This document shows, in pieces, positions 1,729 to 42,912 of a stretch of DNA of 64,000 nt. Location: positions 442,561 through 506,560 of the forward strand of contig JAWQFM010000030.1 in assembly GCA_033442325.1 (NCBI GenBank), written 5' to 3'. Below the pieces are notes generated by a model that was not told the DNA's origin, searched no databases, and saw only the letters and a program-made list of their open reading frames with translations. The stretch's first letter is position 1. Every line of letters starts with the position of its first letter. Both the position numbers and the translations under genes were made by a program. The stretch is from Salpingoeca rosetta (taxonomy: Eukaryota > Protista > Choanoflagellata).

Positions 1729-2242
1729 GCACACACAGCGAGCGCTCACGTGACTGCACTTCGTGTGAAAACCGGGAGCAGATGGCAAGAGTGCGGCAGC
1801 GCGTGCAAATCTCATCTTGTTGGTGAAAAGTAAAGAAACACATCAGAGACAAAAAAGCAAGGCATGTCAGGGATGTCTAGTGCAGAGAGTGCGGCGTACG
1901 ACAGCGAACTTGCACAGCACAGCACACACACACACACACGCACGCACACACACACACGTACATCATAACAAGACAAGCAGCAAACACACACACTCACACA
2001 TCACAACACGGCAAAACCAGGCGTTCATGTCAACCATTGGATCGCATACTTGATGGCACAGAGGTGTGGTAGGCTGAGGGCGGACAAGCGTTGGTTCCGG
2101 ACTTGCATCCCCGTGGGATATAGTGCATCAACGCTGATTCAAGGGGGAATGTGGTGGACAACACGGCGCTGATGAGGTACTTGCATAGAACCGAATGCCC
2201 CCCCCCGCACGCACAACAAGCGGCAGTCAAACAAACAGACAG

Positions 2243-2305
<63 letters not shown>

Positions 2306-2491
2306 AACTCTGTGGGCTTACCGCGCTCGAAATCATTGACTGTGAGGTCGGAGGGAGAGGCAGGAACAACGACGTTGCCTTCACGGATGCCACGTGACCA
2401 TTTGCGAATGTCATTGTGCAAGCCGCCAAAGCACTTGTTGCAGATCCTGCAATTGTGAGCAGGGTGACAAATAATCGTGAGATGGTGCGCA

Positions 2492-2550
<59 letters not shown>

Positions 2551-3827
2551 CACACACACAAGCACACACGCACACAAGCACACAAGCACACACACACAAA
2601 CACACACACACACACACACAGACACACACAGCCGCCACAATTCGAAACCTACTTTGATGCAGAGTTTCGACCAGGACCTTCGCAGATAGGGCAGACGTGT
2701 TGAGAGGACGTGGTATCATCTGGATTGCTGCCTGCAGGCATGCGCTGCTGGTGCTGGGTGAAGAACCCAAAGCTGTTGCCGACAGGACCAGCCACGCCCA
2801 TGTCCGTCAAGGGCATGCTGGCCCCAGGCACCTGTCCATATGCACCGTGGCGCAGCGCGCTGGTGGCGTTGCCTGCATGCAACCTGGCTGCCGCCGCAGC
2901 TGCCGGTGTTGGAGCGGAGGTGTCGCCTGGTGCGGAGGTTTGCAGCATGGAAAGCAGGGCGACTGGATCAACATGCCCATTCCCGAGCATGGCTGCAGGT
3001 GGGGGCGGGGCAGTGGGTGGAGGAATCCCATTTCCTGGTTGCTGCAGTTGTGGTTGTTGCTGCAAGTGTGGTTGTTGCTGCAAGTGTGGTTGCAAGTGCT
3101 GCTGTTGCTGTTGCTGCGTCAGCTGGTGTTGCAGTTCTGCTGCCTCTGTGAGAAAAGGTCGCTTCGCTGGTGGCTCATCTTGGCCTGTGCCATCGGCGTG
3201 CACGGATGCGTCCACGCCAACGCCCGAGTCTGCACCGCCGCCGTGAAGCCGCATCTGCTCCTGCTCCTCACGCAGTTGTTGCTGCAGCAGGAGCTGCTCT
3301 TGGTTGGGCGTTGGGTTGCCTGCAGGCATGCACGACAACGTAGATGTCGAGACATACTGCATGCCCGCAGACGCAACAGACCAGCCCGAACCGGCAGGCT
3401 GACCGTGCTCCACGTGGGCATGCAGTTGCTGTTGTTGCTGTTGTTGCTGTTGTTGCTGTTGTTGCTGTTGTGTGAAATCGCCTACATGTTGCTGCTGTTG
3501 GTGGTACTGAACGTGTTCAGGTTGGCGTTGGCGGTCGTGAGCGCGGGCGCTGGGGGTTGGCATGTTGCTATCGTCGTACATTGGCTGGGACTGTGCCGTC
3601 ACCACGCCCGAGAGTGTGGACGACGTGTGGGGCGGATGTGGCGGGTGCGTGGTGCCAGGCGTGGGTGGAAGCGACCACACGTCATGCGAGGCGCGCCGAA
3701 ATGGATCCAGCACCGCTGATGGCGACAGTGGCATGCGGAACAACGACGGCGATCCAATGTCCTGGCTGAGCCATGCTGACGGGCTCCCAGGTGTCATGGG
3801 TGGCTGCGAAGGCGATGTATGGCTGGG

Positions 3828-11370: not shown

Positions 11371-11656
11371 TTGCGCACGTGTTTGTGTGTGCGTGTGTGT
11401 GTGTAAACGCGGAAGCGTTGTGCGTCAACAAAGCTGAGGCTTGCCTATGCTCGAATGCTGTACACCAACCTGCTCTCTAACCTCACCCTTCCACACTCAA
11501 GGCACTTGCAGTGTGATGCTGCGACGCTGCGACGCTGCGATGCCGAAACCAACCACCAGCCAACACAACAATCGCTCCACAACACCCCCTTCTTTTGTTT
11601 GTGTGTTGGGTGAATTGTTGGCGATTTGCGGATGATTTCATTTGGTTTTCGTCAAG
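11371..11656. promoter_or_regulatory. Putative compact bidirectional promoter (coiled-coil gene / claudin-AGTRAP gene)
   Basis: Divergent ATGs at 11370 (-) and 11657 (+), about 290 bp apart. No specific motif identified. Confidence 0.45.
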
Positions 11657-13649
11657 ATGGATGATGATGAGCAGCAGGCGCTGCTGTCGTCGCGCACCAC
11701 CACCGACGATGTCACGCTCACTGACGCCGCCGCCACACGCACTGCATTCAAGCACCAGCAGCAACAGGTGAAATGGGAGCGGGGCAGGACACTGAGATGG
11801 ATCGGGCGTGGTTTGGCGCGAGTGAATGCGCGAAAGCGTGCAAAATGGATGCTCATCATGGCGGTGGTGTGCACGGTGGTGTGCTTTGTGACGACCGCTT
11901 CCCAGCCGTGGATTGTCAAGCACTTTGACACGGGAAGCAATGCCACAGCCGACGTGAGCCATCATCGCGCCGCCCTTGGCCTGTGGCGGGTGTGCCACAC
12001 GCAGGCGCAAGCAGCCACGGGATTCTCCAAGTCCTCCTGCTTCCTGTACACGCATCACAACGCAATCCGGGAAACTGTGCACTTGAGCGTGAGCTCGCGT
12101 GTGACAACGACGATGGCAGTGGCCGGGTCCTCTTCCGTGGCGTGCTTGCTGCTCACGTTTGCATCCCTCTGCCTCAACTACCTCATCATGCGCGTGAACG
12201 CGCGCCCGCGCCCCCTCGCTCACCTCTTTCTACTCGCGACTGCATTCATCGCAGCCATCATCACTGCCGCTACCATGACGTGGCTCAAGGACCAGCGTGG
12301 CTTCAGGATCACCGCCAATGACAAGAGCAGCAAGAACGGACATGCTGGTTGGTCGCTCGCGCTGTACGCGGTCCACGTCGTGCTCCTTGCTGCTACATCC
12401 ATTGTGCTCCTCATCTCCGTTCTTGGGCGACAAGGCAGGGCCCAATACACCACCGGCACCGGCACCGACACCACTGACAGCAGCAACAACCACGCGACAC
12501 GTGCAGCGTACAGTGACGCAGATACAGCTGCGTCCACCTTGACGAGTGCACTGAGCGCCAGTGACGGTGTTGGTGGACAGGGCACGCTGCTTGTGGCGCT
12601 GCTTGACCTGTGCATTGGCGTGCACACGGTGTGTGCTGTCGCTGGTGGTGCTGGGGCCAGTGGCATGTTCGCCTACAACATCGCCCTTGCCCCCATCCTA
12701 CTGATCGCGCGCTTCCACCACACGAGCAACAACAGAAGCAACACCAGCAACACTAGCAACAGCAGTGGCAGTTGCATCAGCAGATGGATTGCGAGGAATA
12801 AGGTGTTCGTGGCAACGTGTGTGTACCTTGTTCTGAGCATGGTCGTGGACGTGGCCTTGTTTGCAGCACGCACAAAGGCGCTGCTGCAACAGGCTGCGGA
12901 TGGAACGCAACTGGTGCTTGCAGGCAACATGCTGTCCTTTCTCGTCAAGCCCTTCACGCTTGCGCTTTTCGTCCGGTGGGCAAGGAAGGGAGGTACCAAC
13001 AGCAGCAGCACCAGCAGCACCAGCAGGTACGCTGACATCAGCGGCAGTGGCATACCTGCTGGCGAGGGCGATTTGACTGTGCGTGTTCGTGCTGTGAGTC
13101 AGGGGCTGGTGTCGTCTCCAGGGCACGTTGTACTGGTGGGAGAGGAACGGTGCTCCGATAGCACAACGGCGCGTGATGCAAGTGCTGACGGGAACGCGGC
13201 TGCCGTGGTTGCAAACACTGCACGTGCTCCTGAGACCGACACACAAATACAACAACAACACCAGCAGCAGCAGCAGCAGCAGCAGCGCAGGGGGCGGAAA
13301 AAGCGGAGGAAGAAGCCATCGGCTCGAGGCCAACTTGCAGCGCTTGACGTGCCTGCAAGCACTGGGGTCATTGACGTGCTCGAGTTTGAGTCAACCACAA
13401 CGGCAGCAACAGGCACTACACCAACAGCAACATCAACAAGAGCAACCGCAGCAACGGCTGGGGCTCGGCCCAGGCATCAACACGATACAGCAGGGCAGGG
13501 AGCAGAGATCACGACGGATACTCGCACTGCATCTGGCCAAGTTGTGCCCGGAGGTGCGAACAGTGGCCGTGAGCATCAACGTGCGTGTAGAAACGAGGGT
13601 GCGAGTAGCAAGGAGACTAACGAACAAGATAGTGGTGGAAGAAGTACTG

Positions 13650-13726
<77 letters not shown>

Positions 13727-15035
13727 GGGCTGGGCGTGGATGACGATGTGCTCTTTGCCAACGCGCGCAATTTCGACGCCGTGCTGAAGAATGCTCACGC
13801 TGGTGCCACTGATGGTGATAATCATGCACGTGCCACCAGCACCGCTACTCGTGGTCGTGTCGGTGGTGCGAGGAGTGGAGATGACACACGTGCTCCAAAG
13901 CGAAGGGCGCGGCGCGCGCGTTTGGAAAGGAGGGAGCGCGAGCGGATCGAGGCAACAGACACGCTTGCACCACTTGACCTCGTGCAACTGCGCATGCACA
14001 CACGCGCGCATCCGTCAGCATCACGCCATCGGACGAGCGGTGGATGGAGAGCACAACCAGACCTGCGCGATGAACGCTCTGGCATCGTCAGTGATGACGA
14101 TGATGGTGTTGACGATGATGGTGGAGGTGCGAGGAGGAGAGGTGGGAGTTTGGATCGCAACAACGCTGCACGCGTGCGGCCAATGCAAACACACGCACCG
14201 CTGCAAGCAGGTAATCACGTTGGTGGTGTCGTTGAACACTCGAAAGCTACAGGCGGCGTTGGCGAACACGTAGGAAGACAGCGCGCTTTGAGTGACACGG
14301 CTGCCAAAAGTGAGAATGGTGATGGTGATGATGACGATGGTGGTGATGACGAGCAAGCGCGCAACAGTGCACAACAGCAGCACCAGCAACAACAACAACA
14401 ACGACGACAACAAAAACAACAACAACAACAGCAACAGCAACAGCAGCACCAGCACCAGCACCAACAACAAGGTGTTATTGGTCGCTTGTTCCGATCGCGG
14501 TCGTTCACCGCCCTTTTCCGTCGCAGCGATGACAGACACCACCAAGACAGTGGTGATGGTGGTAATGATGGTGAGAACAATGCAAGGCACGCCACCACAG
14601 GCAGCAGCAGCAGCAGGAGCAAGTATACTGACAACGATGACGTTTACAGGAGATATGATCAAGACCGCGCTCCTGCTGCTCCTGCTGCTCCTGCTGGTGT
14701 CGATGCGCGCACGTGCAATGATGTCACCGGTCGTGGACAGGCTCGCCCGGCCGTCGCACCACGAAACGCAACGACAGCAGGTGCACGTGCAACAGCCGTG
14801 GATGAGAGCACCCGTCGTGCCAGATCACGCTCGCTGCAGCACTTGTCTGCACATCATGTTTCCAACACCGATATTGGTCATGGTAGTGGGGCGGTAGTGG
14901 GGTCACACGGAGGCGACTCCTTGTTTGAGGGGAAGGAGGACTTACTCGTCACGCGAGCAAGGTCGTCATCCCTAAATTTTTCATCACCGCAACCGTCGCA
15001 CACAGCACGGCGCCTACATGCTGATCACACGAGTC

Positions 15036-15117
<82 letters not shown>

Positions 15118-15535
15118 GAAGATTCCACGGCGACATCGCCGCTCGCGTTCATCCTCGTCATTGCGCGTTACAAACACGCATGCACACCAAGATGCACCCA
15201 CCACCGACACCACCAGCACCAGCACACGTGAACACGTCGGGGTGGCCATGCCACAACCCACACCACCAGCAACTCAACGAGTTGCCGCTGCTGACAGCAA
15301 GCGTGCCAGCAGTGCCAGCGCCCGCGCACGGGTTCAGCGCAGCCGCAGCCACAGCCGCACACGCACACGCACACGCCCACGCTCACGGACAGGATCTCTT
15401 CGCCACACGGAGGCAGTGGCAACAGACGCCAGACAGCAGACAGGGAAGGGGCGGGCGTGTCCGGTGTGTGGGCGCGTGTTTGCGGATGCAATCACAGTGG
15501 AGTTGCATCGCAGGCGAGGCAGCTGTGCCGACTGA
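11657..15535 (+). CDS. Intronless ~1290-aa membrane protein: claudin/PMP22-like 4-TM domain + AGTRAP-like domain + long Q/R-rich disordered tail + C-terminal C2HC (UBZ-like) zinc finger
   Basis: Claudin-superfamily W...GLW..C...C loop (SQPW...LGLWRVC...SSC) and a TM4-like GWSLAL. The second hydrophobic block (YNIAL, LSMVVDVALF, LSFLVKPFTLALFVRWARKGG) resembles AGTRAP (...TIFLDI...LSLLLKPLSCCFVYHMYRERGG). The protein ends CPVCGRVFADAITVELHRRRGSCAD*. Confidence 0.8.
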
Positions 15536-16695
15536 TGTGTTTGTTTGTGTTTGTGTGTGTGTGTGTGTAAGTGTGTGTGTTTTTGTGATTATGGTTGTGT
15601 GTGTGTGTTGTGTGTGTGTTTGTATTTGTATTTGTGTGTGTGCGTGCGTGGGCTTTGTATTTGACATGAATTTTTCCTCATAAATGGACTTGCAATCAAT
15701 GAAGTTGCTTCTCTTCATGCTATTCGTGTATTTGGTGTCAAAACGCCATTGGTTGAATGCAAAGAAAGCTGGACCACCCAACTACACACTACACACTGCA
15801 CACGCGCACGCACGTCAACAACAGAGGGGTGGATTGGCACGTGTTAGGGCAACGCAGGCATCTGGACATTGTGGTTTGGTGTGATGACAGTTGCAGCCGC
15901 CACGAAGAACAGAAAACTGCACGTCAATTACACGCACATGCACAACGCATGGGATCATGAGTGGGGTAACTATTAACCATGAAAGGATGCAGGGAATGGT
16001 ACTACACTCTCACCATGGAACAGCAAACAATGGCGATGGAACACAAGCATCACTGGGGATGTAACGACAACGAACGATTGCACCAAGTAAGTGCATGTTA
16101 GGCACGACCGTAATGTAACACATTGACATTTGCGAGTACACCATGGACACTTGCAGACGTGGAGGCATCTGTCTGCATTAGGTACACTGCACGTGTGGCA
16201 CAACATGATACAAGGGCGGGGTAATAGACATCGAGGTAAGGCGAATAAACGTGACAGCGTGCAGATGCAAGCTGGAAGAGGCGAGAACCAACAACCAGCA
16301 AATGCATGGCACGGCACAAACGCATCATGGATGCTGCAGGAGAGACATGACAGGCAGAATGCACAAGTGTGAATGAACACAGGTAAGGTAAGGATCGACA
16401 ACGCGGGGAAGCGGGGGAGCGGGGGAGGCTACGTACAGAGACACACAGAGAGACACGAGGAGGAGTGCCTCAGAATTGCTGTCATGTGTGATAGCCGCAA
16501 CGGTGAGAAGTAGATACTCGCAGACGGAGCAGGGGATTGTCAACTGCAACACAGTGAAATCGTCTACAAGACGAGCAAAGGGTGGCGATTACGGAGTTGG
16601 AGCCATCTGGTTGCTCGGCCGCACGGAGGGACGAACAACGAAGCGAAGCGAAGAGTGTCAGGAGGTGTAGTTGGTGGAGAAAAGAGGAGAACTTG

Positions 16696-18119
16696 TCACG
16701 GTAGCAGAACATCCACGTTTTGGAACAGCGTGGAATTGCTTGCCAGCAGCATCTCGGTAACGATGTTGTAGAGAAGGCCTTGATTGTTCCTGATGTGAAG
16801 AAAGAATGCAACGCCTTGGTTTGGTTTGGTTGGCGCGTGGGGTTGTTCGGGGAAAGGGTGTGTGGACGCACATGTGCGCGTGGATGGCTCTTGCTGGACT
16901 GGAGAGACGAGAAGGTAAAACAGCCGGGACAACACAAGAAGGGGCCCATCCATCCGCTGCTTGTTACTGATGCCAATGCGTCATTACGCAACTTGGTTTG
17001 CGCGTGCGCGCTGGAGGCATTTCATCACGACTGCGCCAGGCATTGGAGCGAAGAATCATCATGGAACATCGTCCATGTGCAGTCCAAAGTTGAAAGTTGG
17101 TCGTTGTTTTCACACGGATCGCCAGCAGTGGTGTTGGTGGCATGCCCGTCATGTATGGTGTTGATCAAAGAAAGAACAGTGCGTTTGGGCATGGGGGAGC
17201 AAGAACAAGCGTGAGATGATAGTCGCCGGAGTATACGTGTCGTGTTCGTCTGTGAGCACTCGCATGCTCACTGGCATGACAGCGGGCATAGACGCAGTGT
17301 GCAGTCATCAGACTGAAACCCAGATGGAGGCGGGGGGGGGGGGAGAACCCACCCACACACACGCACGCACGCAATTGTGGTGGTGGTACGACACGCCAGC
17401 TGTTCGCACCTCGAATGACCATGTTGGGATCGCGATGGCACGCGGCAATGGTGCGGCAGCGTGTGCACTTGGACACTGATCGACGACAAAACCACAAAGA
17501 AAAGGAAAAAGGAAGGAGGAAAAAAAAAAAAAAGGACAAAAAAAGAAAGGGAAACGAAATACGTAGCAGAAGACAGGTTCGTGATTATTTTGAGCGATGG
17601 TATGAATGGTGAAAGCGAAGGAGTGAATGGTGAGAGGATAATAACCACTTCTGGACATTGAACAATTAAAGTGGTGGGACGTCCACAAGGACACTTGCAC
17701 TTTTTTGCAAGTGCGCGCAGACACAAGAGCAACAGCACATTCCAACAACCACAAGCGTGCGCGACACGTGTGTGTGTGTGTGTGTGAAGGTGAGAAGTGG
17801 CTCTTTATGTACACTGCTGGTTGTGCAACTCACCAGAGTCTTGGTGGAAGTTTTCATCCGTGCACTGGTAGTTTTGGGAGCACCCGCGAGGCATTTCCTT
17901 GAGATCTGCGTGCATGCAAGCAATGCGAGCAGGCAAGTAGGCATAAACATGGCGGTGATGCGAAAGCAGAAGGGTCAGCGACAGTGAAGTGGGGTGAGGT
18001 GTGTATTGAGGGAGTAAGCGAAGCTCGCAGCATCAAGCAGGACTGGAATGACGAAACAAGCTGCCAGCGTGCACACGTACACACATCGCTGAACACGCGG
18101 CAACGACTGCCCCATCTTC

Positions 18120-18169
<50 letters not shown>

Positions 18170-21100
18170 ATACCTTCGATGAGTTGGTCAAAGGAAAACT
18201 GCCGCATGTCGTTGAGGTAAAACACGCGACGCGGGTCTCGCCGCACCCATTTGCGAATGTCATTGTACACGCCACTGCACAATTGCACAATACACACGCG
18301 CGCGCGTGTGTGTGTGAATGCGCGGTTGTAAGGTTTTGGATGAGTTTCGGGTGGCGACAGAGAGAAAGATCGTGTGTTTGGGGCAAAGGGCATTTCATGT
18401 GCGTGAGCGATAAGGTAACGACGATAAGGGTCATAAACAGGCAGCGGGCGGGCAGGCTGTCGTGTGAGCTTGCCAGCACGATAGAACACTCAAACAAGAG
18501 AAACAATAGAATGCCACGTGCCAGCTTGCATCAGGTCTCACCAGTAGCACGTGGAGCACAGCTGCCTGCTCAGCCACAAGGTTTGACGACACAAACACAC
18601 AAGGCAAAGTGTGAGAATCAGTCGCATTTTACAAAACAAAACTAAACAAATGAAGTGATGCGGGCATGTCGCTCTTAAATCCTGCAACGTCTCGTCCCCC
18701 CCTCCTCTTTGGTCATCGTTGCCTCGCGCACACGCAAAGGAATGACAACAAAGGAATGACACGCACATGCGCGGCTACATCAAACAACAACGAACGAGCA
18801 CAGGTTCGCGCCCATGTTATTTCAACCCAAACACGCACAGCAAGGAAACATACAAACAGACAACCAAACAAACAGATAACCAAACAAACGCACACTCAAA
18901 AGAATGCATCACAGACTCAAACATTGCAACGACACATTCACGTCCACGCCAGCAAATTACAACGTACCCCCGCATGCCGTGATCGCTCTCGCGCTGACAG
19001 ACGCAGCAGATGTTGCTTTCGCGCTTGGCTGGCCGTGGATAGCCAAGCAGACGCGCAATGCGACTGGCTGGGTCTTCCACCGCCAGGCCAGCCATCATGT
19101 CCGTGCTGATCCCGGACGGGGATTCCACATCCCCGCTGTCCGGCATTCGCGGTTCAAATTGCGCGGCGGTCAGCTGTTGTGGGGACGCGTGCGAGCGTTG
19201 CATGGCGTCCATGTGTTGCTGCTGCAGTTGCGGTGATGTCGTCATCTGCATTGAAGGCAGCTGTGGTGCGAACGTGCCAGGCTGGAAAAACGCCTGTGCA
19301 GGCTGCTGGTGGTGCTGCTGTTGCGGCTGGTGCGATGGTGATTGCTGGTGCTGCTGTTGCGGCTGCATGGCCAGTGGTGACATCTGATGGGGAATGCCAC
19401 CAGACATGCCTGTGAGGGCAACGCCGCTGCTGTCAACAGGCAGCGCGCTGAAGTCAAGACCAGGGAACATGGATTGCATGGCCATTGGCGAGAGCTGGCG
19501 GCTTTGCTGCGGCTGCGGCTGCTGTTGTGGCTGCTGTTGCGGCTGCGGTTGAAAAGGGAACGCAGACATGGGTTGCATGCGCGCGTTGCCCATGTGTTGC
19601 TGGTGCTGCTGCCTTGACCTTGATGGTGATGCCGTCAGCTGCTGCGGTGACACTTGCTGAAACCCGCCCACTTGTTGTCGCGGAGGCTGCTGCTGCTGCT
19701 GCTGGAGTTGCTGGAGCTGGCGAAGGTTTTCAAGCAACTGCTGCTGCTGCTGTTGCTGCTGTTGCTGCTGCTGTTGTTGGTGGTGTTGCTGCTGTTGGTC
19801 TTGGGTGTCTGGCCCCTGGAAGTGTCGCAGCATCTCTGCAATGGCGACGGGAGAGACGCCCAGTGGGGGTGTGCCTGCAAGTGGCGACATGGTGCCTGTT
19901 GATTGCATCGGCGTGCGCATGCCTTGCATCATGTCACCGCCGCCGCCACCACCACCACCACCACCACCACTGAGCGTGGACGATGGCTGCTGGCGCTGTT
20001 GCGGTGCCATGCGCTGTGAGAGGTCATGGGAGCTCCCAGGTCGCTTTGCAGGGAGCGGGTCTGGGCCAGGCCGCCTCTTTCCCGAATGGGAAGGTGGGGC
20101 GTGGTTGGACGCACGCGACATGCCCGGCGATGAAGGCGACGCCGTTGACATGGGCTGCTGCTGGTGGTGGTGCTGTTGTTGCAGGAGCATCATGAGGGAG
20201 CGACCGGCATCCGGCTGCGACATGGACGATGCCGATGATGTTGCTGATGACGAAGGCACGCCAGGCATCGGCTGCTGTTGCTGCTGCTGCTGCCAGAACC
20301 CTGCACCCATGCTGGCACCCGGGGAGGGCGATGATGTGTATGACGTGGGTGACAGCGAGTATGACAGTAGTGTGGGTTGCGTGTGCTGCTGCTGCTGCTG
20401 TTGCTGCTGTGACTGCTCGCCTGATTGGTCTGCCGCGCGTCGCAGGAAGTCTTCAATCGCTTGGTGCTGCTGTTGTTGTCCCTGTGGCGGTTTGGCCTGA
20501 TGTTCCTCCTGCCCCTGTCCTTGCTGCTGCTGCTGCTGGTGCTGGGTCTTGGCCAGGCGCGCCTGCGATTGCATAATGCGTTTCTGCAGGTCGAGAATGG
20601 AGGAAACGCTTGCGTCATCGCCGCTTGCCGCCGCGCTGGCTGGCGGCATGCGTGTGCTGAGCAGCTGTTGGGTGGCGCGAGAGAGCTGGGATGACGACTG
20701 CTCATCCCCAGGCGCCTCCTGCTGCTTGTGTTCAGTTGTGCTGGACGCAAGGCCGTCATGTCTGCCGTGTGACGCGGCTGATGCCGATGCCTGCAGGCAT
20801 GAATGGACAGACAAAACAAGATGCCGCAGCACGGAAACAGTGCCATGCCGGTGAGCGACCATGACGTTGCGTTGGGAGGGGGAAATGAGCGTGTTGGGGG
20901 AAGAAAAATGTCGGTGATCAGGGACAAACCAGACCAACAAACAAACCAACAAACAAACAAACAGACAAGCCATACAAACAAACAAACAAACCAGCAAACC
21001 AGACAAACAACCCCAAAGGAAAACAGCACAACGTGCCTGTGGCGTTGCCTGCGTGGACATGGCCACGAGCGTCTCTGCCGCCTGTTGTGAGGACGAGAGA

Positions 21101-41792: not shown

Positions 41793-41892
41793 NNNNNNNN
41801 NNNNNNNNNNNNNNNNNNNNNNNNNNNNNNNNNNNNNNNNNNNNNNNNNNNNNNNNNNNNNNNNNNNNNNNNNNNNNNNNNNNNNNNNNNNN
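41793..41892. other. Assembly gap (100 N)
   Basis: Run of N. Confidence 1.
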
Positions 41893-42314: not shown

Positions 42315-42859
42315 TAGTTTATTTTGAGCGACTGGTTATGAATGGTGAAAGCGAAGTGAGTGAATGGTGAGAGAGATAATAACCCATTTCTGGACATTGT
42401 ACAATTAAAAGTGGTGGGACGTCCTCAAGGACACTTGCACTTTTTTGCAAGTGCGCGCAGACACAAGAGCAACAGCACATTCCAACAACCACAAGCGTGC
42501 GCGACACGTGTGTGTGTGTGTGTGTGAAGGTGAGAAGTGGCTCTTTATGTACACTGCTGGTTGTGCAACTCACCAGAGTCTTGGTGGAAGTTTTCATCCG
42601 TGCACTGGTAGTTTTGGGAGCACCCGCGAGGCATTTCCTTGAGATCTGCGTGCATGCAAGCAATGCGAGCAGGCAAGTAGGCATAAACATGGCGGTGATG
42701 CGAAAGCAGAAGGGTCAGCGACAGTGAAGTGGGGTGAGGTGTGTATTGAGGGAGTAAGCGAAGCTCGCAGCATCAAGCAGGACTGGAATGACGAAACAAG
42801 CTGCCAGCGTGCACACGTACACACATCGCTGAACACGCGGCAACGACTGCCCCATCTTC

Positions 42860-42903
<44 letters not shown>
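42315..42903 (+). repeat. Near-identical direct copy of ~17580-18165 (paralog B intron and zinc-finger exon); probable chimeric join at a (CA)n tract
   Basis: Identical at an offset of 24740, with scattered indels only in the first ~100 bp; it ends in a CA repeat. Confidence 0.85.

Positions 42904-42912
<9 letters not shown>

What the first reader, a model, noticed from the sequence alone, without database searches (positions are those of the whole stretch)
17410..19020. Second paralog confirms the zinc-finger module is a conserved family, with matching intron positions
Seen: 15 kb away on the same strand, a second Gln-rich gene splices to C-x2-C-x12-C-x2-C-x43-C-x5-C-x12-C-x2-C-R-x4-C (CCVC..CSTC-YCGVYNDIRKW..PRGCSQNYQC..CTRCRTIAAC). 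All 9 Cys, G-x2-NDIRKW, PRGC and CTRCRT are shared with paralog A, while I see no similarity in the remainder. A 20-nt stretch encoding NDIRKW is identical (2398-2417 and 18247-18266). Intron phases match (phase 2 before the second CxxC, then 1, 1, 1), and the CTRCR exon is 66 nt in both genes. Paralog B has an extra intron that creates a 24-nt microexon (18565-18542). Its C-x5-C spacing equals the NR D-box. Inference: an old tandem duplication under purifying selection. The invariant putative recognition helix suggests a shared DNA target, possibly bound as a heterodimer.
Basis: partly seen in the sequence, partly recalled or inferred. Interest (0 to 1): 0.88.

Follow-up and report, generated by a model that had tools for sequence, protein, structure and literature searches.

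The report
Choanoflagellate nuclear-receptor-like zinc finger family
This spliced gene of the choanoflagellate Salpingoeca rosetta ends in an eight-cysteine, two-zinc domain from an unnamed family of about 18 genes, so far seen only in choanoflagellates, and the domain is predicted to fold like the DNA-binding domain of animal nuclear hormone receptors although its sequence shows no detectable relationship to them.

Summary
On the minus strand, five GT..AG exons splice into a Cys-rich domain: ..-18968, 18565-18542, 18274-18174, 17905-17834 and 17475-17410. A second gene 15 kb away (paralog A) has the same motifs, the same intron phases and the same 66-nt last domain exon. A 2011 transcript contig covers exactly these exons, microexon included.

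The interpretation needs widening and trimming.
- This is not a pair. The genome (Salpingoeca rosetta) holds about 18 loci, and relatives occur in six other named craspedid choanoflagellate species.
- Two loci encode the whole domain without introns, which proves the spliced frame.
- Eight Cys are invariant or nearly so. The ninth is not conserved.
- A and B are not each other's closest paralogs.
- B's microexon intron is shared with at least two other paralogs.

No Pfam family and no PDB sequence matches the domain. A profile-profile comparison with nuclear-receptor (NR) DNA-binding domains (DBDs) is negative. Even so, two AlphaFold models (pLDDT 95 and 91) find NR DBDs as their best structural matches in every search (Z 6-6.8).

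Most likely these are Gln-rich transcription factors with a double C4 DNA-binding module. DNA binding and any dimerisation are inferred, not shown. The scan reached the same reading earlier on another locus of this genome (s1-435326).

The parts
18968..19120 (-). 3' end of the large Gln-rich exon of paralog B. The open frame runs up to about 22335. The first CxxC (C-C-V-C) is at 19008-18997. The exon ends in phase 2 with donor GTACGT.
   Evidence: a piece of an X7 transcript contig lies on 18967-19115
18542..18565 (-). 24-nt microexon of B encoding (G)QLCSTCY(C), which holds the second CxxC of zinc site I. It has AG/GT borders and phase 2 on both sides.
   Evidence: X7 depth in bin 18400-18599 equals 23 nt of the same contig; 21-nt counterparts exist in two paralogs, one of them inside an annotated protein (P0010)
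18174..18274 (-). Exon 3 of B (101 nt): GVYNDIRKW and the rest of the helix after zinc site I, plus the first part of the inserted helical linker. It ends in phase 1.
   Evidence: X7 depth and X9 contig 18176-18275
17834..17905 (-). Exon 4 of B (72 nt): LKEMPRGC-x5-C, the first two Cys of zinc site II. It ends in phase 1.
   Evidence: X7 depth
17410..17475 (-). Exon 5 of B (66 nt): SKCTRCRTIAAC.., the last CxxC of zinc site II and the start of the second helix. It ends in phase 1.
   Evidence: X7 depth equals 66 nt
15715..16966 (-). Probable last exon and 3' UTR of B. An acceptor AG lies at 16968-16967. The exact acceptor and reading frame are not settled.
   Evidence: X7 contigs on 16327-16963, 15961-16308 and 15715-15921, with no X7 depth in 17000-17399
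2653..2716 (-). 3' end of the large Gln-rich exon of paralog A, with the first CxxC (C-P-I-C). It ends in phase 2.
2322..2446 (-). Exon 2 of A (125 nt): ICNKCFGGLHNDIRKW.. . It corresponds to B's microexon plus exon 3, with no intron between them.
2050..2133 (-). Exon 3 of A (84 nt): ..IPRGC-x6-C..
1750..1815 (-). Exon 4 of A (66 nt): (N)EICTRCRTLAIC..

Best explanation
Paralog B is a real, transcribed, multi-exon gene of Salpingoeca rosetta. It encodes a long Gln-rich, low-complexity protein with a domain of about 100-115 residues close to its C-terminal end.

The domain has eight conserved cysteines that should hold two zinc ions. Site I is C-x2-C-x11/12-C-x2-C. Site II is C-x5/6-C-x12-14-C-x2-C. 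Each site is followed by an alpha-helix. A helical insert of about 25 residues lies between the first helix and site II, and a long basic helix follows at the C-terminal end of the domain.

The domain defines an unnamed family: about 18 loci in this genome, annotated only as 'hypothetical', plus members in other craspedid choanoflagellates. It is predicted to fold like a nuclear-receptor DNA-binding domain (a double treble clef).

The most likely function is a sequence-specific transcription factor. The helix that starts at the second CxxC of site I (C-x2-C-Y-x-G-[LV]-Y-N-D-I-x-K) would read the DNA major groove. The basic flanks would add backbone or minor-groove contacts or nuclear import. 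The Gln-rich remainder would act as the activation region.

Shown: the exons, their transcription, the family, cysteine conservation, the lack of any Pfam match, and the fold prediction with its best structural matches.
Inferred: zinc binding, DNA binding and the role in transcription.
For: - Splice sites, frame and phases.
- A transcript contig covers exactly the exons.
- Two paralogs encode the whole domain in one open frame (L015:1435-1800 and L023:1501-1863), and others join blocks that are split in B.
- The NDIRKW DNA pattern has 5 hits in the genome against 0 for the control.
- The family profile finds colinear exon hits at about 18 loci.
- A whole-library phmmer search finds only 25 proteins among 1.84 billion representatives. 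All named ones are choanoflagellates and carry no functional name.
- Six Cys are invariant in both alignments and the other two are invariant in one and over 90% in the other. Y, D, K, R and P are also invariant or nearly so.
- A and B each score 92 bits against the family HMM.
- Models reach pLDDT 95 (pTM 0.86) and pLDDT 91 (pTM 0.83).
- Best structural matches are NR DBDs in every search. Foldseek gives nearly all of the top 27 rows for model 1 and all 50 listed rows for model 2, with probability up to 0.99. VIA-align gives the top 8 and top 11, Z 5.9-6.8, rmsd 2.0-2.9 A over 68-78 of 72-83 residues for all but the 4nqa_I (both models) and 7wnh_A rows (rmsd 3.7-5.8), at 17-23% identity. The ESM Atlas top 2 are zf-C4 clusters..
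- The domain carries a net charge of +3 to +16 in all members.
- The host proteins have no other Pfam domain and are Gln-rich.
Against: - No experiment shows zinc or DNA binding.
- Foldseek E-values are weak (0.08-4), and Z below 8 can reflect only a common arrangement of small zinc modules (notes).
- Both models rest on the same shallow set of family sequences (18 rows each) and may lean on learned C4-C4 patterns.
- The putative recognition helix carries a conserved Asp and few basic residues, unlike the NR P-box helix.
- B's own domain has only +3 net charge.
- B's spliced domain could not itself be submitted to Pfam or to the fold tools. An intronless paralog stood in for it.
- B's C-terminal exon is not resolved.
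Confidence: 0.6

Rival explanations
1. The family is a true, very distant homologue of the animal nuclear-receptor DNA-binding domain, either a sister or an ancestral lineage. On this view the NR DBD arose from a pre-animal choanozoan double-C4 factor and was later fused to a ligand-binding domain.
For: - NR DBDs are the best structural match for two models in three libraries, covering the whole NR domain with all eight Cys plausibly aligned (17-23% identity).
- The C-x5-C spacing at the start of site II is the same.
- Choanoflagellates are the sister group of animals.
- Pfam zf-C4 without an LBD has been reported in choanoflagellates (PMC6792448).
Against: - Pfam zf-C4 does not hit any member at E up to 10.
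- In the genome it hits two other places, not these loci.
- hhalign of the family against an NR DBD alignment gives probability 1.6%.
- The spacings differ: x11-12 against x13, a linker of about 39-45 against 15-17, and x12-14 against x9.
- The NR signature CEGCKGFFRR is absent.
- No animal member was found.
- Small zinc folds converge easily.
Confidence: 0.2
2. The domain is a double zinc module that binds protein or RNA rather than DNA, like LIM, MYND or zinc-ribbon modules. The proteins would then be scaffolds or RNA regulators, not transcription factors.
For: - Language-model features place it nearest to MYND fingers (score 0.89, below the trusted level).
- There are weak sub-threshold hits to the double zinc ribbon family DZR_2 and to ribosomal zinc ribbons.
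- A conserved Asp sits in the putative reading helix.
Against: - No LIM, MYND or zinc-ribbon structure outranks NR DBDs in any fold search.
- The domains are basic.
- Gln-rich partners and a C-terminal position fit transcription factors.
Confidence: 0.17
3. The A/B likeness is a chance or low-complexity artefact of Cys-rich translations of GT/CA-rich DNA, or B is a dead copy.
For: The genome is full of (GT)n, which gives Cys/Val-rich false frames. Raw-read RNA runs X18 and X19 gave only low-complexity mappings.
Against: - B scores 92 bits against an independent family HMM.
- Intronless paralogs and orthologues in other species exist.
- All splice sites are canonical and the frames are open.
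- A transcript contig matches the exons.
Confidence: 0.02

Closest known systems
Nuclear receptor DNA-binding domain (Pfam PF00105 zf-C4, 'double treble clef zinc finger, C4 type')
   Same: - Eight Cys form two C4 zinc sites, each followed by a helix.
- Site II starts with C-x5-C.
- The predicted three-dimensional arrangement superposes on whole NR DBDs (Z 6-6.8, rmsd 2.0-2.9 A for most rows).
- The long C-terminal helix recalls the C-terminal extension helix of TR and VDR DBDs, which appear among the Foldseek matches with longer alignments.
- The domain is basic.
   Different: - There is no HMM or profile-profile similarity.
- The Cys spacings differ.
- A helical insert of about 25 residues lies between helix 1 and site II.
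- The conserved helix motif is C-x2-C-Y-x-G-L-Y-N-D-I-x-K, not CEGCKGFFRR.
- There is no ligand-binding domain.
- The domain sits at the C-terminal end of Gln-rich proteins.
- It is found in choanoflagellates only.
zf-C4-only proteins reported in choanoflagellates (Lopez-Escardo et al. 2019, PMC6792448)
   Same: Both are choanoflagellate proteins with an NR-DBD-type zinc module and no hormone-receptor domain.
   Different: Those proteins were found by the Pfam zf-C4 model, and the present family is invisible to it. In this genome the weak zf-C4 hit lies elsewhere (C23:207872-208033, locus L019, 15.6-16.8 bits). It has no profile similarity to this family.
Generic double zinc ribbons (Pfam PF18912 DZR_2; ComF N-terminal domain) and ribosomal zinc ribbons (eS31, bL32)
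   Same: They share paired CxxC knuckles. Weak sequence hits (best E 0.0037 to 0.5) and atlas fold rows at TM 0.39-0.43 point to them.
   Different: All these hits are below threshold. They cover one module only or rank below NR DBDs, and they lack the two helices packed as in the model.

Membership tests
Pfam PF00105 zf-C4 (nuclear receptor DBD) | Match to the family HMM at or above the curated cut-off of 21.1 bits | tested here: not met
   There were 0 zf-C4 hits at E up to 10 for the intronless paralog and for all 18 aligned members. In the six-frame genome search, zf-C4 hits two other places and none of the family loci.
Pfam PF00105 zf-C4 (nuclear receptor DBD) | Profile-profile homology to NR DBDs | tested here: not met
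   hhalign of A2 against A3 (18 NR DBD fragments, all carrying PF00105) gave probability 1.6%, with only 23 columns of the first zinc module aligned. The NR alignment was not very diverse (RXR, COUP and HNF4-like).
Pfam PF00105 zf-C4 (nuclear receptor DBD) | Eight conserved Cys forming two C4 zinc sites | tested here: met
   C9, C24, C27, C67, C73, C86 and C89 are invariant and C12 is over 90% conserved in A2. All eight are invariant in A4. Zinc binding itself was not tested.
Pfam PF00105 zf-C4 (nuclear receptor DBD) | Canonical spacing C-x2-C-x13-C-x2-C-x15-17-C-x5-C-x9-C-x2-C and the helix signature CEGCKGFF[KR]R | tested here: not met
   The family has x11-12, a linker of about 39-45, x5 (x6 in A) and x12-14. 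Its helix motif is C-x2-C-Y-x-G-L-Y-N-D-I-x-K, against the NR alignment.
Pfam PF00105 zf-C4 (nuclear receptor DBD) | Three-dimensional fold of two zinc modules with two roughly perpendicular helices | tested here: inconclusive
   Two predicted models have NR DBDs as best matches everywhere. But these are predictions, Z is 6-6.8 and Foldseek E is 0.08-4.
Pfam PF00105 zf-C4 (nuclear receptor DBD) | Association with a ligand-binding domain (PF00104), as in a complete nuclear receptor | tested here: not met
   No Pfam domain was found in eight full-length members.
Unnamed choanoflagellate family (PTSG_12352, PTSG_02264, PTSG_00329, PTSG_07689 and relatives) | Significant score against the family profile over the whole domain | tested here: met
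   Spliced B scores 92.0 bits and spliced A 91.9 bits against an HMM of 18 other members.
Unnamed choanoflagellate family (PTSG_12352, PTSG_02264, PTSG_00329, PTSG_07689 and relatives) | Four colinear motif blocks: CP[IV]C-G-x-GR; C-x2-C-Y-x-G-[LV]-Y-N-D-I-x-K; [LM]PRGC-x5-C; C-T-R-C-R-[ST] | tested here: met
   B has all four in order. Its first block is degenerate (CCVCQRES)..
Unnamed choanoflagellate family (PTSG_12352, PTSG_02264, PTSG_00329, PTSG_07689 and relatives) | Shared intron positions in the domain | tested here: met
   A and B share three positions and phases. B's microexon intron is shared with the C1 and C20 copies. Some copies have lost introns.
Pfam PF18912 DZR_2 (double zinc ribbon) | HMM match above the cut-off | tested here: not met
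   10 of 18 members give weak hits, best E 0.0037, and none for the first member at E up to 10.

The most novel reading that the evidence does not exclude
This family is the surviving choanoflagellate branch of the lineage that gave rise to the nuclear-receptor DNA-binding domain. If so, the DNA-reading half of nuclear receptors predates animals as a free-standing, multi-gene family of transcription factors. Nuclear receptors would then have arisen by shortening the inter-finger linker and fusing the domain to a ligand-binding domain.
Probability: 0.2. Interest if true: 0.85.

Novelty: new variant of a known kind. Interest (0 to 1): 0.6.

Why it matters
Nuclear receptors are treated as an animal invention that is absent from choanoflagellates (PMC2950128). 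The origin of their DNA-binding domain is open, and only a bare Pfam zf-C4 signal in some choanoflagellates has been reported (PMC6792448).

Here there is a separate family of about 18 genes in the model choanoflagellate S. rosetta. Domain databases do not see it, and it is partly mis-annotated because it is split over very small exons. Its predicted fold is that of the NR DBD.

If these proteins bind DNA, they add a sizeable lineage-specific class of transcription factors to the closest relatives of animals. They would also give a concrete candidate for testing where the NR DBD came from. S. rosetta can be transformed and edited, so this is testable.

As a finding about this particular locus it is a second or third sighting of the same family, not a new class.

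Tried and rejected
- **Search for B's annotated protein.** The search for homologous proteins with the end of B's large exon found nothing. No hit of the whole-library search is A or B. Their domains therefore seem to be missing from public protein sets.
- **Pfam on single exons of A and B.** Nothing, as expected for 21-50 aa.
- **Raw-read RNA runs X18 and X19.** They gave only poly-Gln and (GT)n mis-mappings and no usable junctions.
- **PDB by sequence.** Only zinc ribbons of bL32m and eS31 appeared, at E 0.08-0.5, which is not significant.
- **ESM Atlas features.** They pointed to MYND fingers at 0.89, below the trusted level, and no fold search supports this.
- **hhalign of the family against the weak zf-C4-like peptide of L019.** No relation.
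- **Profile search in the 5.8-billion set.** It was limited to 67-213 aa and returned only two known members.
- **Idea that A and B are sister tandem copies.** Rejected on identity in the conserved blocks. This used rough exon merges for the other loci, and no formal tree was built. With about 18 loci in 55 Mb, about 0.09 pairs within 16 kb are expected by chance (my estimate), so an ancient tandem origin stays plausible.
- **dN/dS between A and B.** Not attempted, because at 32% protein identity the synonymous sites are saturated. The identical 20-mer reflects identical choices at only two or three synonymous sites.
- **A/B dimer prediction.** No job was sent, because nothing here supports a claim that they bind.
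- **B's spliced domain.** It has no single reference, so it was used only inside scripts. Pfam, PDB and the structure tools were run on the intronless paralog L015:1435-1800 instead.
Full report
**What is in the sequence**

The window is eukaryotic: GC 0.55, poly-Gln open frames and (GT)n-rich introns. It belongs to a 55.4-Mb assembly of 68 contigs. Exact protein look-ups identify the organism as Salpingoeca rosetta.

On the minus strand, the large Gln-rich open frame 22335-18817 leaves its frame at a GTACGT donor after 18968. Four small exons follow, all with AG/GT borders:
- 18565-18542 (24 nt)
- 18274-18174 (101 nt)
- 17905-17834 (72 nt)
- 17475-17410 (66 nt)

They continue the frame without a stop. 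The product reads ..ICCVC-x12-CSTC-Y-C-GVYNDIRKW.., then ..LKEMPRGC-x5-C.., then ..KCTRCRTIAAC...

Paralog A lies 15 kb away on the same strand, with exons ending or lying at 2653, 2446-2322, 2133-2050 and 1815-1750. It gives the same blocks.
- Phases are 2,1,1,1 in A and 2,2,1,1,1 in B.
- The first intron splits the tenth codon after the first CxxC in both genes.
- The last intron lies three codons before CTRC in both.
- The last domain exon is 66 nt in both.
- The 20-mer 2398-2417 equals 18247-18266.

The small corrections are that A has x11 and x6 where B has x12 and x5.

**Is it more than chance, and is it expressed?**

A and B are 32% identical over 102 residues, pairwise E 7e-14. Each scores 92 bits against a profile built from 18 other proteins. 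Their Gln-rich parts share nothing once low complexity is masked.

Reads were laid once. The two raw-read RNA runs gave only low-complexity mappings.

Run X7 (2011) was informative. One of its contigs, 426 nt at depth 5.9, lies with 149 nt on 18967-19115 and then leaves the genome sequence at the donor. X7's depth per 200-nt bin equals that contig's depth times 23, 75+24, 74 and 66 nt in the bins that hold the microexon and exons 3, 4 and 5. Depth is zero in the intron bins. Further X7 contigs cover 16963-15715, the probable last exon and 3' UTR.

A contig of another study (X9) carries exon 3 with 50 letters that lie elsewhere.

The refutation condition 'the microexon or downstream exons are absent from transcripts' is therefore not met. 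The individual pieces of the X7 contig on the small exons were not listed by the tool, so this is depth arithmetic, not a printed junction.

**A family, not a pair**

- The DNA pattern for NDIRKW occurs five times in the genome, against none for the control.
- A profile of the domain finds colinear exon-sized hits at about 18 loci on 13 contigs.
- The copies at C13:1454036 (locus L015; PTSG_12352) and C25:530518 (L023) encode the whole domain in one open frame.
- Other copies join blocks that are split in B. This independently proves the spliced frame.

A whole-library phmmer search with the intronless domain found only 25 proteins among 1.84 billion representatives. Every named one is a choanoflagellate protein without a functional name:
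- S. rosetta PTSG_12352, PTSG_02264, PTSG_00329 and PTSG_07689
- S. infusionum
- S. kvevrii
- Microstomoeca roanoka
- Choanoeca perplexa
- Hartaetosiga balthica
- Hartaetosiga gracilis

Some hits come from unnamed Logan assemblies.

In the 18-sequence alignment, eight Cys are invariant or nearly so, together with Y28, D34, K37, R88 and P99.

A is closest to the C33 copy (54% in the conserved blocks). B is closest to the C11 and C1 copies (48% and 47%). A and B share 40% (a rough merge).

B's 'extra' intron, phase 2 right after C-x2-C-Y, is also present in the C1 copy (PTSG_00329) and the C20 copy (PTSG_07689). There it makes 21-nt microexons, and the annotated PTSG_00329 protein includes its microexon. 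A and B thus belong to different subgroups. Their adjacency may be an old tandem event, but sequence does not show it.

**What it is like**

Sequence methods find nothing known:
- Pfam gives no family at E up to 10 for the intronless domain. For the 18 members it gives only sub-threshold double-zinc-ribbon noise.
- Full-length members have no Pfam domain at all.
- PDB sequences give only insignificant zinc ribbons.

AlphaFold2 with the family alignment gives confident models:
- S. rosetta PTSG_12352 domain: pLDDT 95, pTM 0.86.
- The most divergent member, P0020: pLDDT 91, pTM 0.83.

Both models have the same layout. A zinc knuckle is followed by a helix that starts at the second CxxC. Then come one or two short helices (an insert), a second Cys cluster, a helix that starts at the fourth CxxC, and a long C-terminal helix.

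In every structure search the best matches are nuclear-receptor DNA-binding domains:
- Foldseek on PDB: nearly all of the top 27 rows for model 1 and all 50 listed rows for model 2, E 0.08-4, probability up to 0.99, TM by target about 0.6-0.68.
- Exhaustive VIA-align: top 8 and top 11, Z 5.9-6.8. Most rows have rmsd 2.0-2.9 A over 68-78 of 72-83 residues at 17-23% identity. The 4nqa_I rows and the model-1 7wnh_A row have rmsd above 5 A. Unrelated folds start at Z 5.9 for model 1 and 5.7 for model 2.
- ESM Atlas: the top two clusters carry zf-C4.

These scores are middling, and small zinc folds converge.

The sequence tests of kinship fail:
- zf-C4 does not hit the family.
- hhalign against 18 database NR DBDs gives probability 1.6%.
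- The spacings and the helix signature also differ.

My conclusion is that it probably works like an NR DBD, but membership of zf-C4 is not supported.

**Likely function**

Four observations fit a family of sequence-specific transcription factors:
- a basic domain, net +3 to +16;
- basic stretches before the first CxxC and in the last helix;
- a position at the C-terminal end;
- long Gln-rich partners.

None of this is shown experimentally. The conserved Asp and the scarcity of basic residues in the putative reading helix are a caution.

**Literature and earlier notes**

Nuclear receptors are described as absent from choanoflagellates (PMC2950128). A later domain survey found Pfam zf-C4 alone in some choanoflagellates (PMC6792448). 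That signal is a different set of proteins, since this family is invisible to the Pfam model. No paper mentions PTSG_02264, PTSG_00329 or PTSG_12352.

After my own analysis I found that the scan holds several first-reader notes on other loci of this family. One follow-up (s1-435326) reached the same reading. My results agree with it and were obtained independently on other loci.

**Verdict**

This locus is one more member of an undescribed, choanoflagellate-restricted family with a nuclear-receptor-like predicted fold. That is interesting for the origin of animal transcription factors, but functionally unproven and already seen elsewhere in this scan.

Noticed in passing
window 42319-42905 (compare 17585-18165): A 587-bp stretch is 98.5% identical to B's exon 4 with its flanking intron parts. 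It lies about 430 bp from the N gap at 41793-41892. The genome profile search also picks it up (C30:485108-485224). It is either a small recent segmental copy or an assembly artefact. It holds no other exon of the gene.
   Followed up: partly
L019:1501-1662 minus strand (G000:C23:207872-208033): Inside an 886-aa open frame there is a weak Pfam zf-C4 match (15.6-16.8 bits, below the 21.1 cut-off). It has NR-like strings (C-T-Y-C-I-K-F-F and C-F-G-C-L-Y-Q-R-C-L-D-V-G-I). It may be the S. rosetta counterpart of the 'zf-C4 alone' proteins reported in choanoflagellates. It shows no profile similarity to the family studied here.
   Followed up: partly
L018:1501-1662 plus strand (G000:C31:210311-210472): This is a zf-C4 match of 24.1 bits, above the cut-off, but the peptide lacks the zinc-binding Cys pairs (C-T-A-N in place of C-E-G-C). 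It sits in a 134-aa open frame. It is probably spurious or a relic.
   Followed up: partly
G000 loci C13:1015125-1015595 (P0015), C20:332276-332677 (P0009 = PTSG_07689), C13:1454036 (P0001 = PTSG_12352): Public gene models of several family members look incomplete. P0015 lacks the CTRCR exon. P0009 lacks the first CxxC. P0001 starts inside a much longer open frame and skips 29 codons just before the domain. The domains of A and B were not found in any public protein set.
   Followed up: partly
window 11642-15535 (+): The neighbouring single-exon open frame of 1297 aa has several poly-Gln runs and a C-terminal C-P-V-C-G..H-R-R-R-G-S-C motif. It converges on the 3' end of gene B. Other readers of the scan also noted it.
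   Followed up: no
L016:2970-4319 (Logan SRR26909563 contig): The most divergent family members (P0020 and P0021, 21% identical to the S. rosetta domain) come from unnamed sequencing runs. They are encoded without introns next to an open frame with a Laminin_G_3 hit. The organism is unknown, so the family's range beyond the named craspedid species is open.
   Followed up: no
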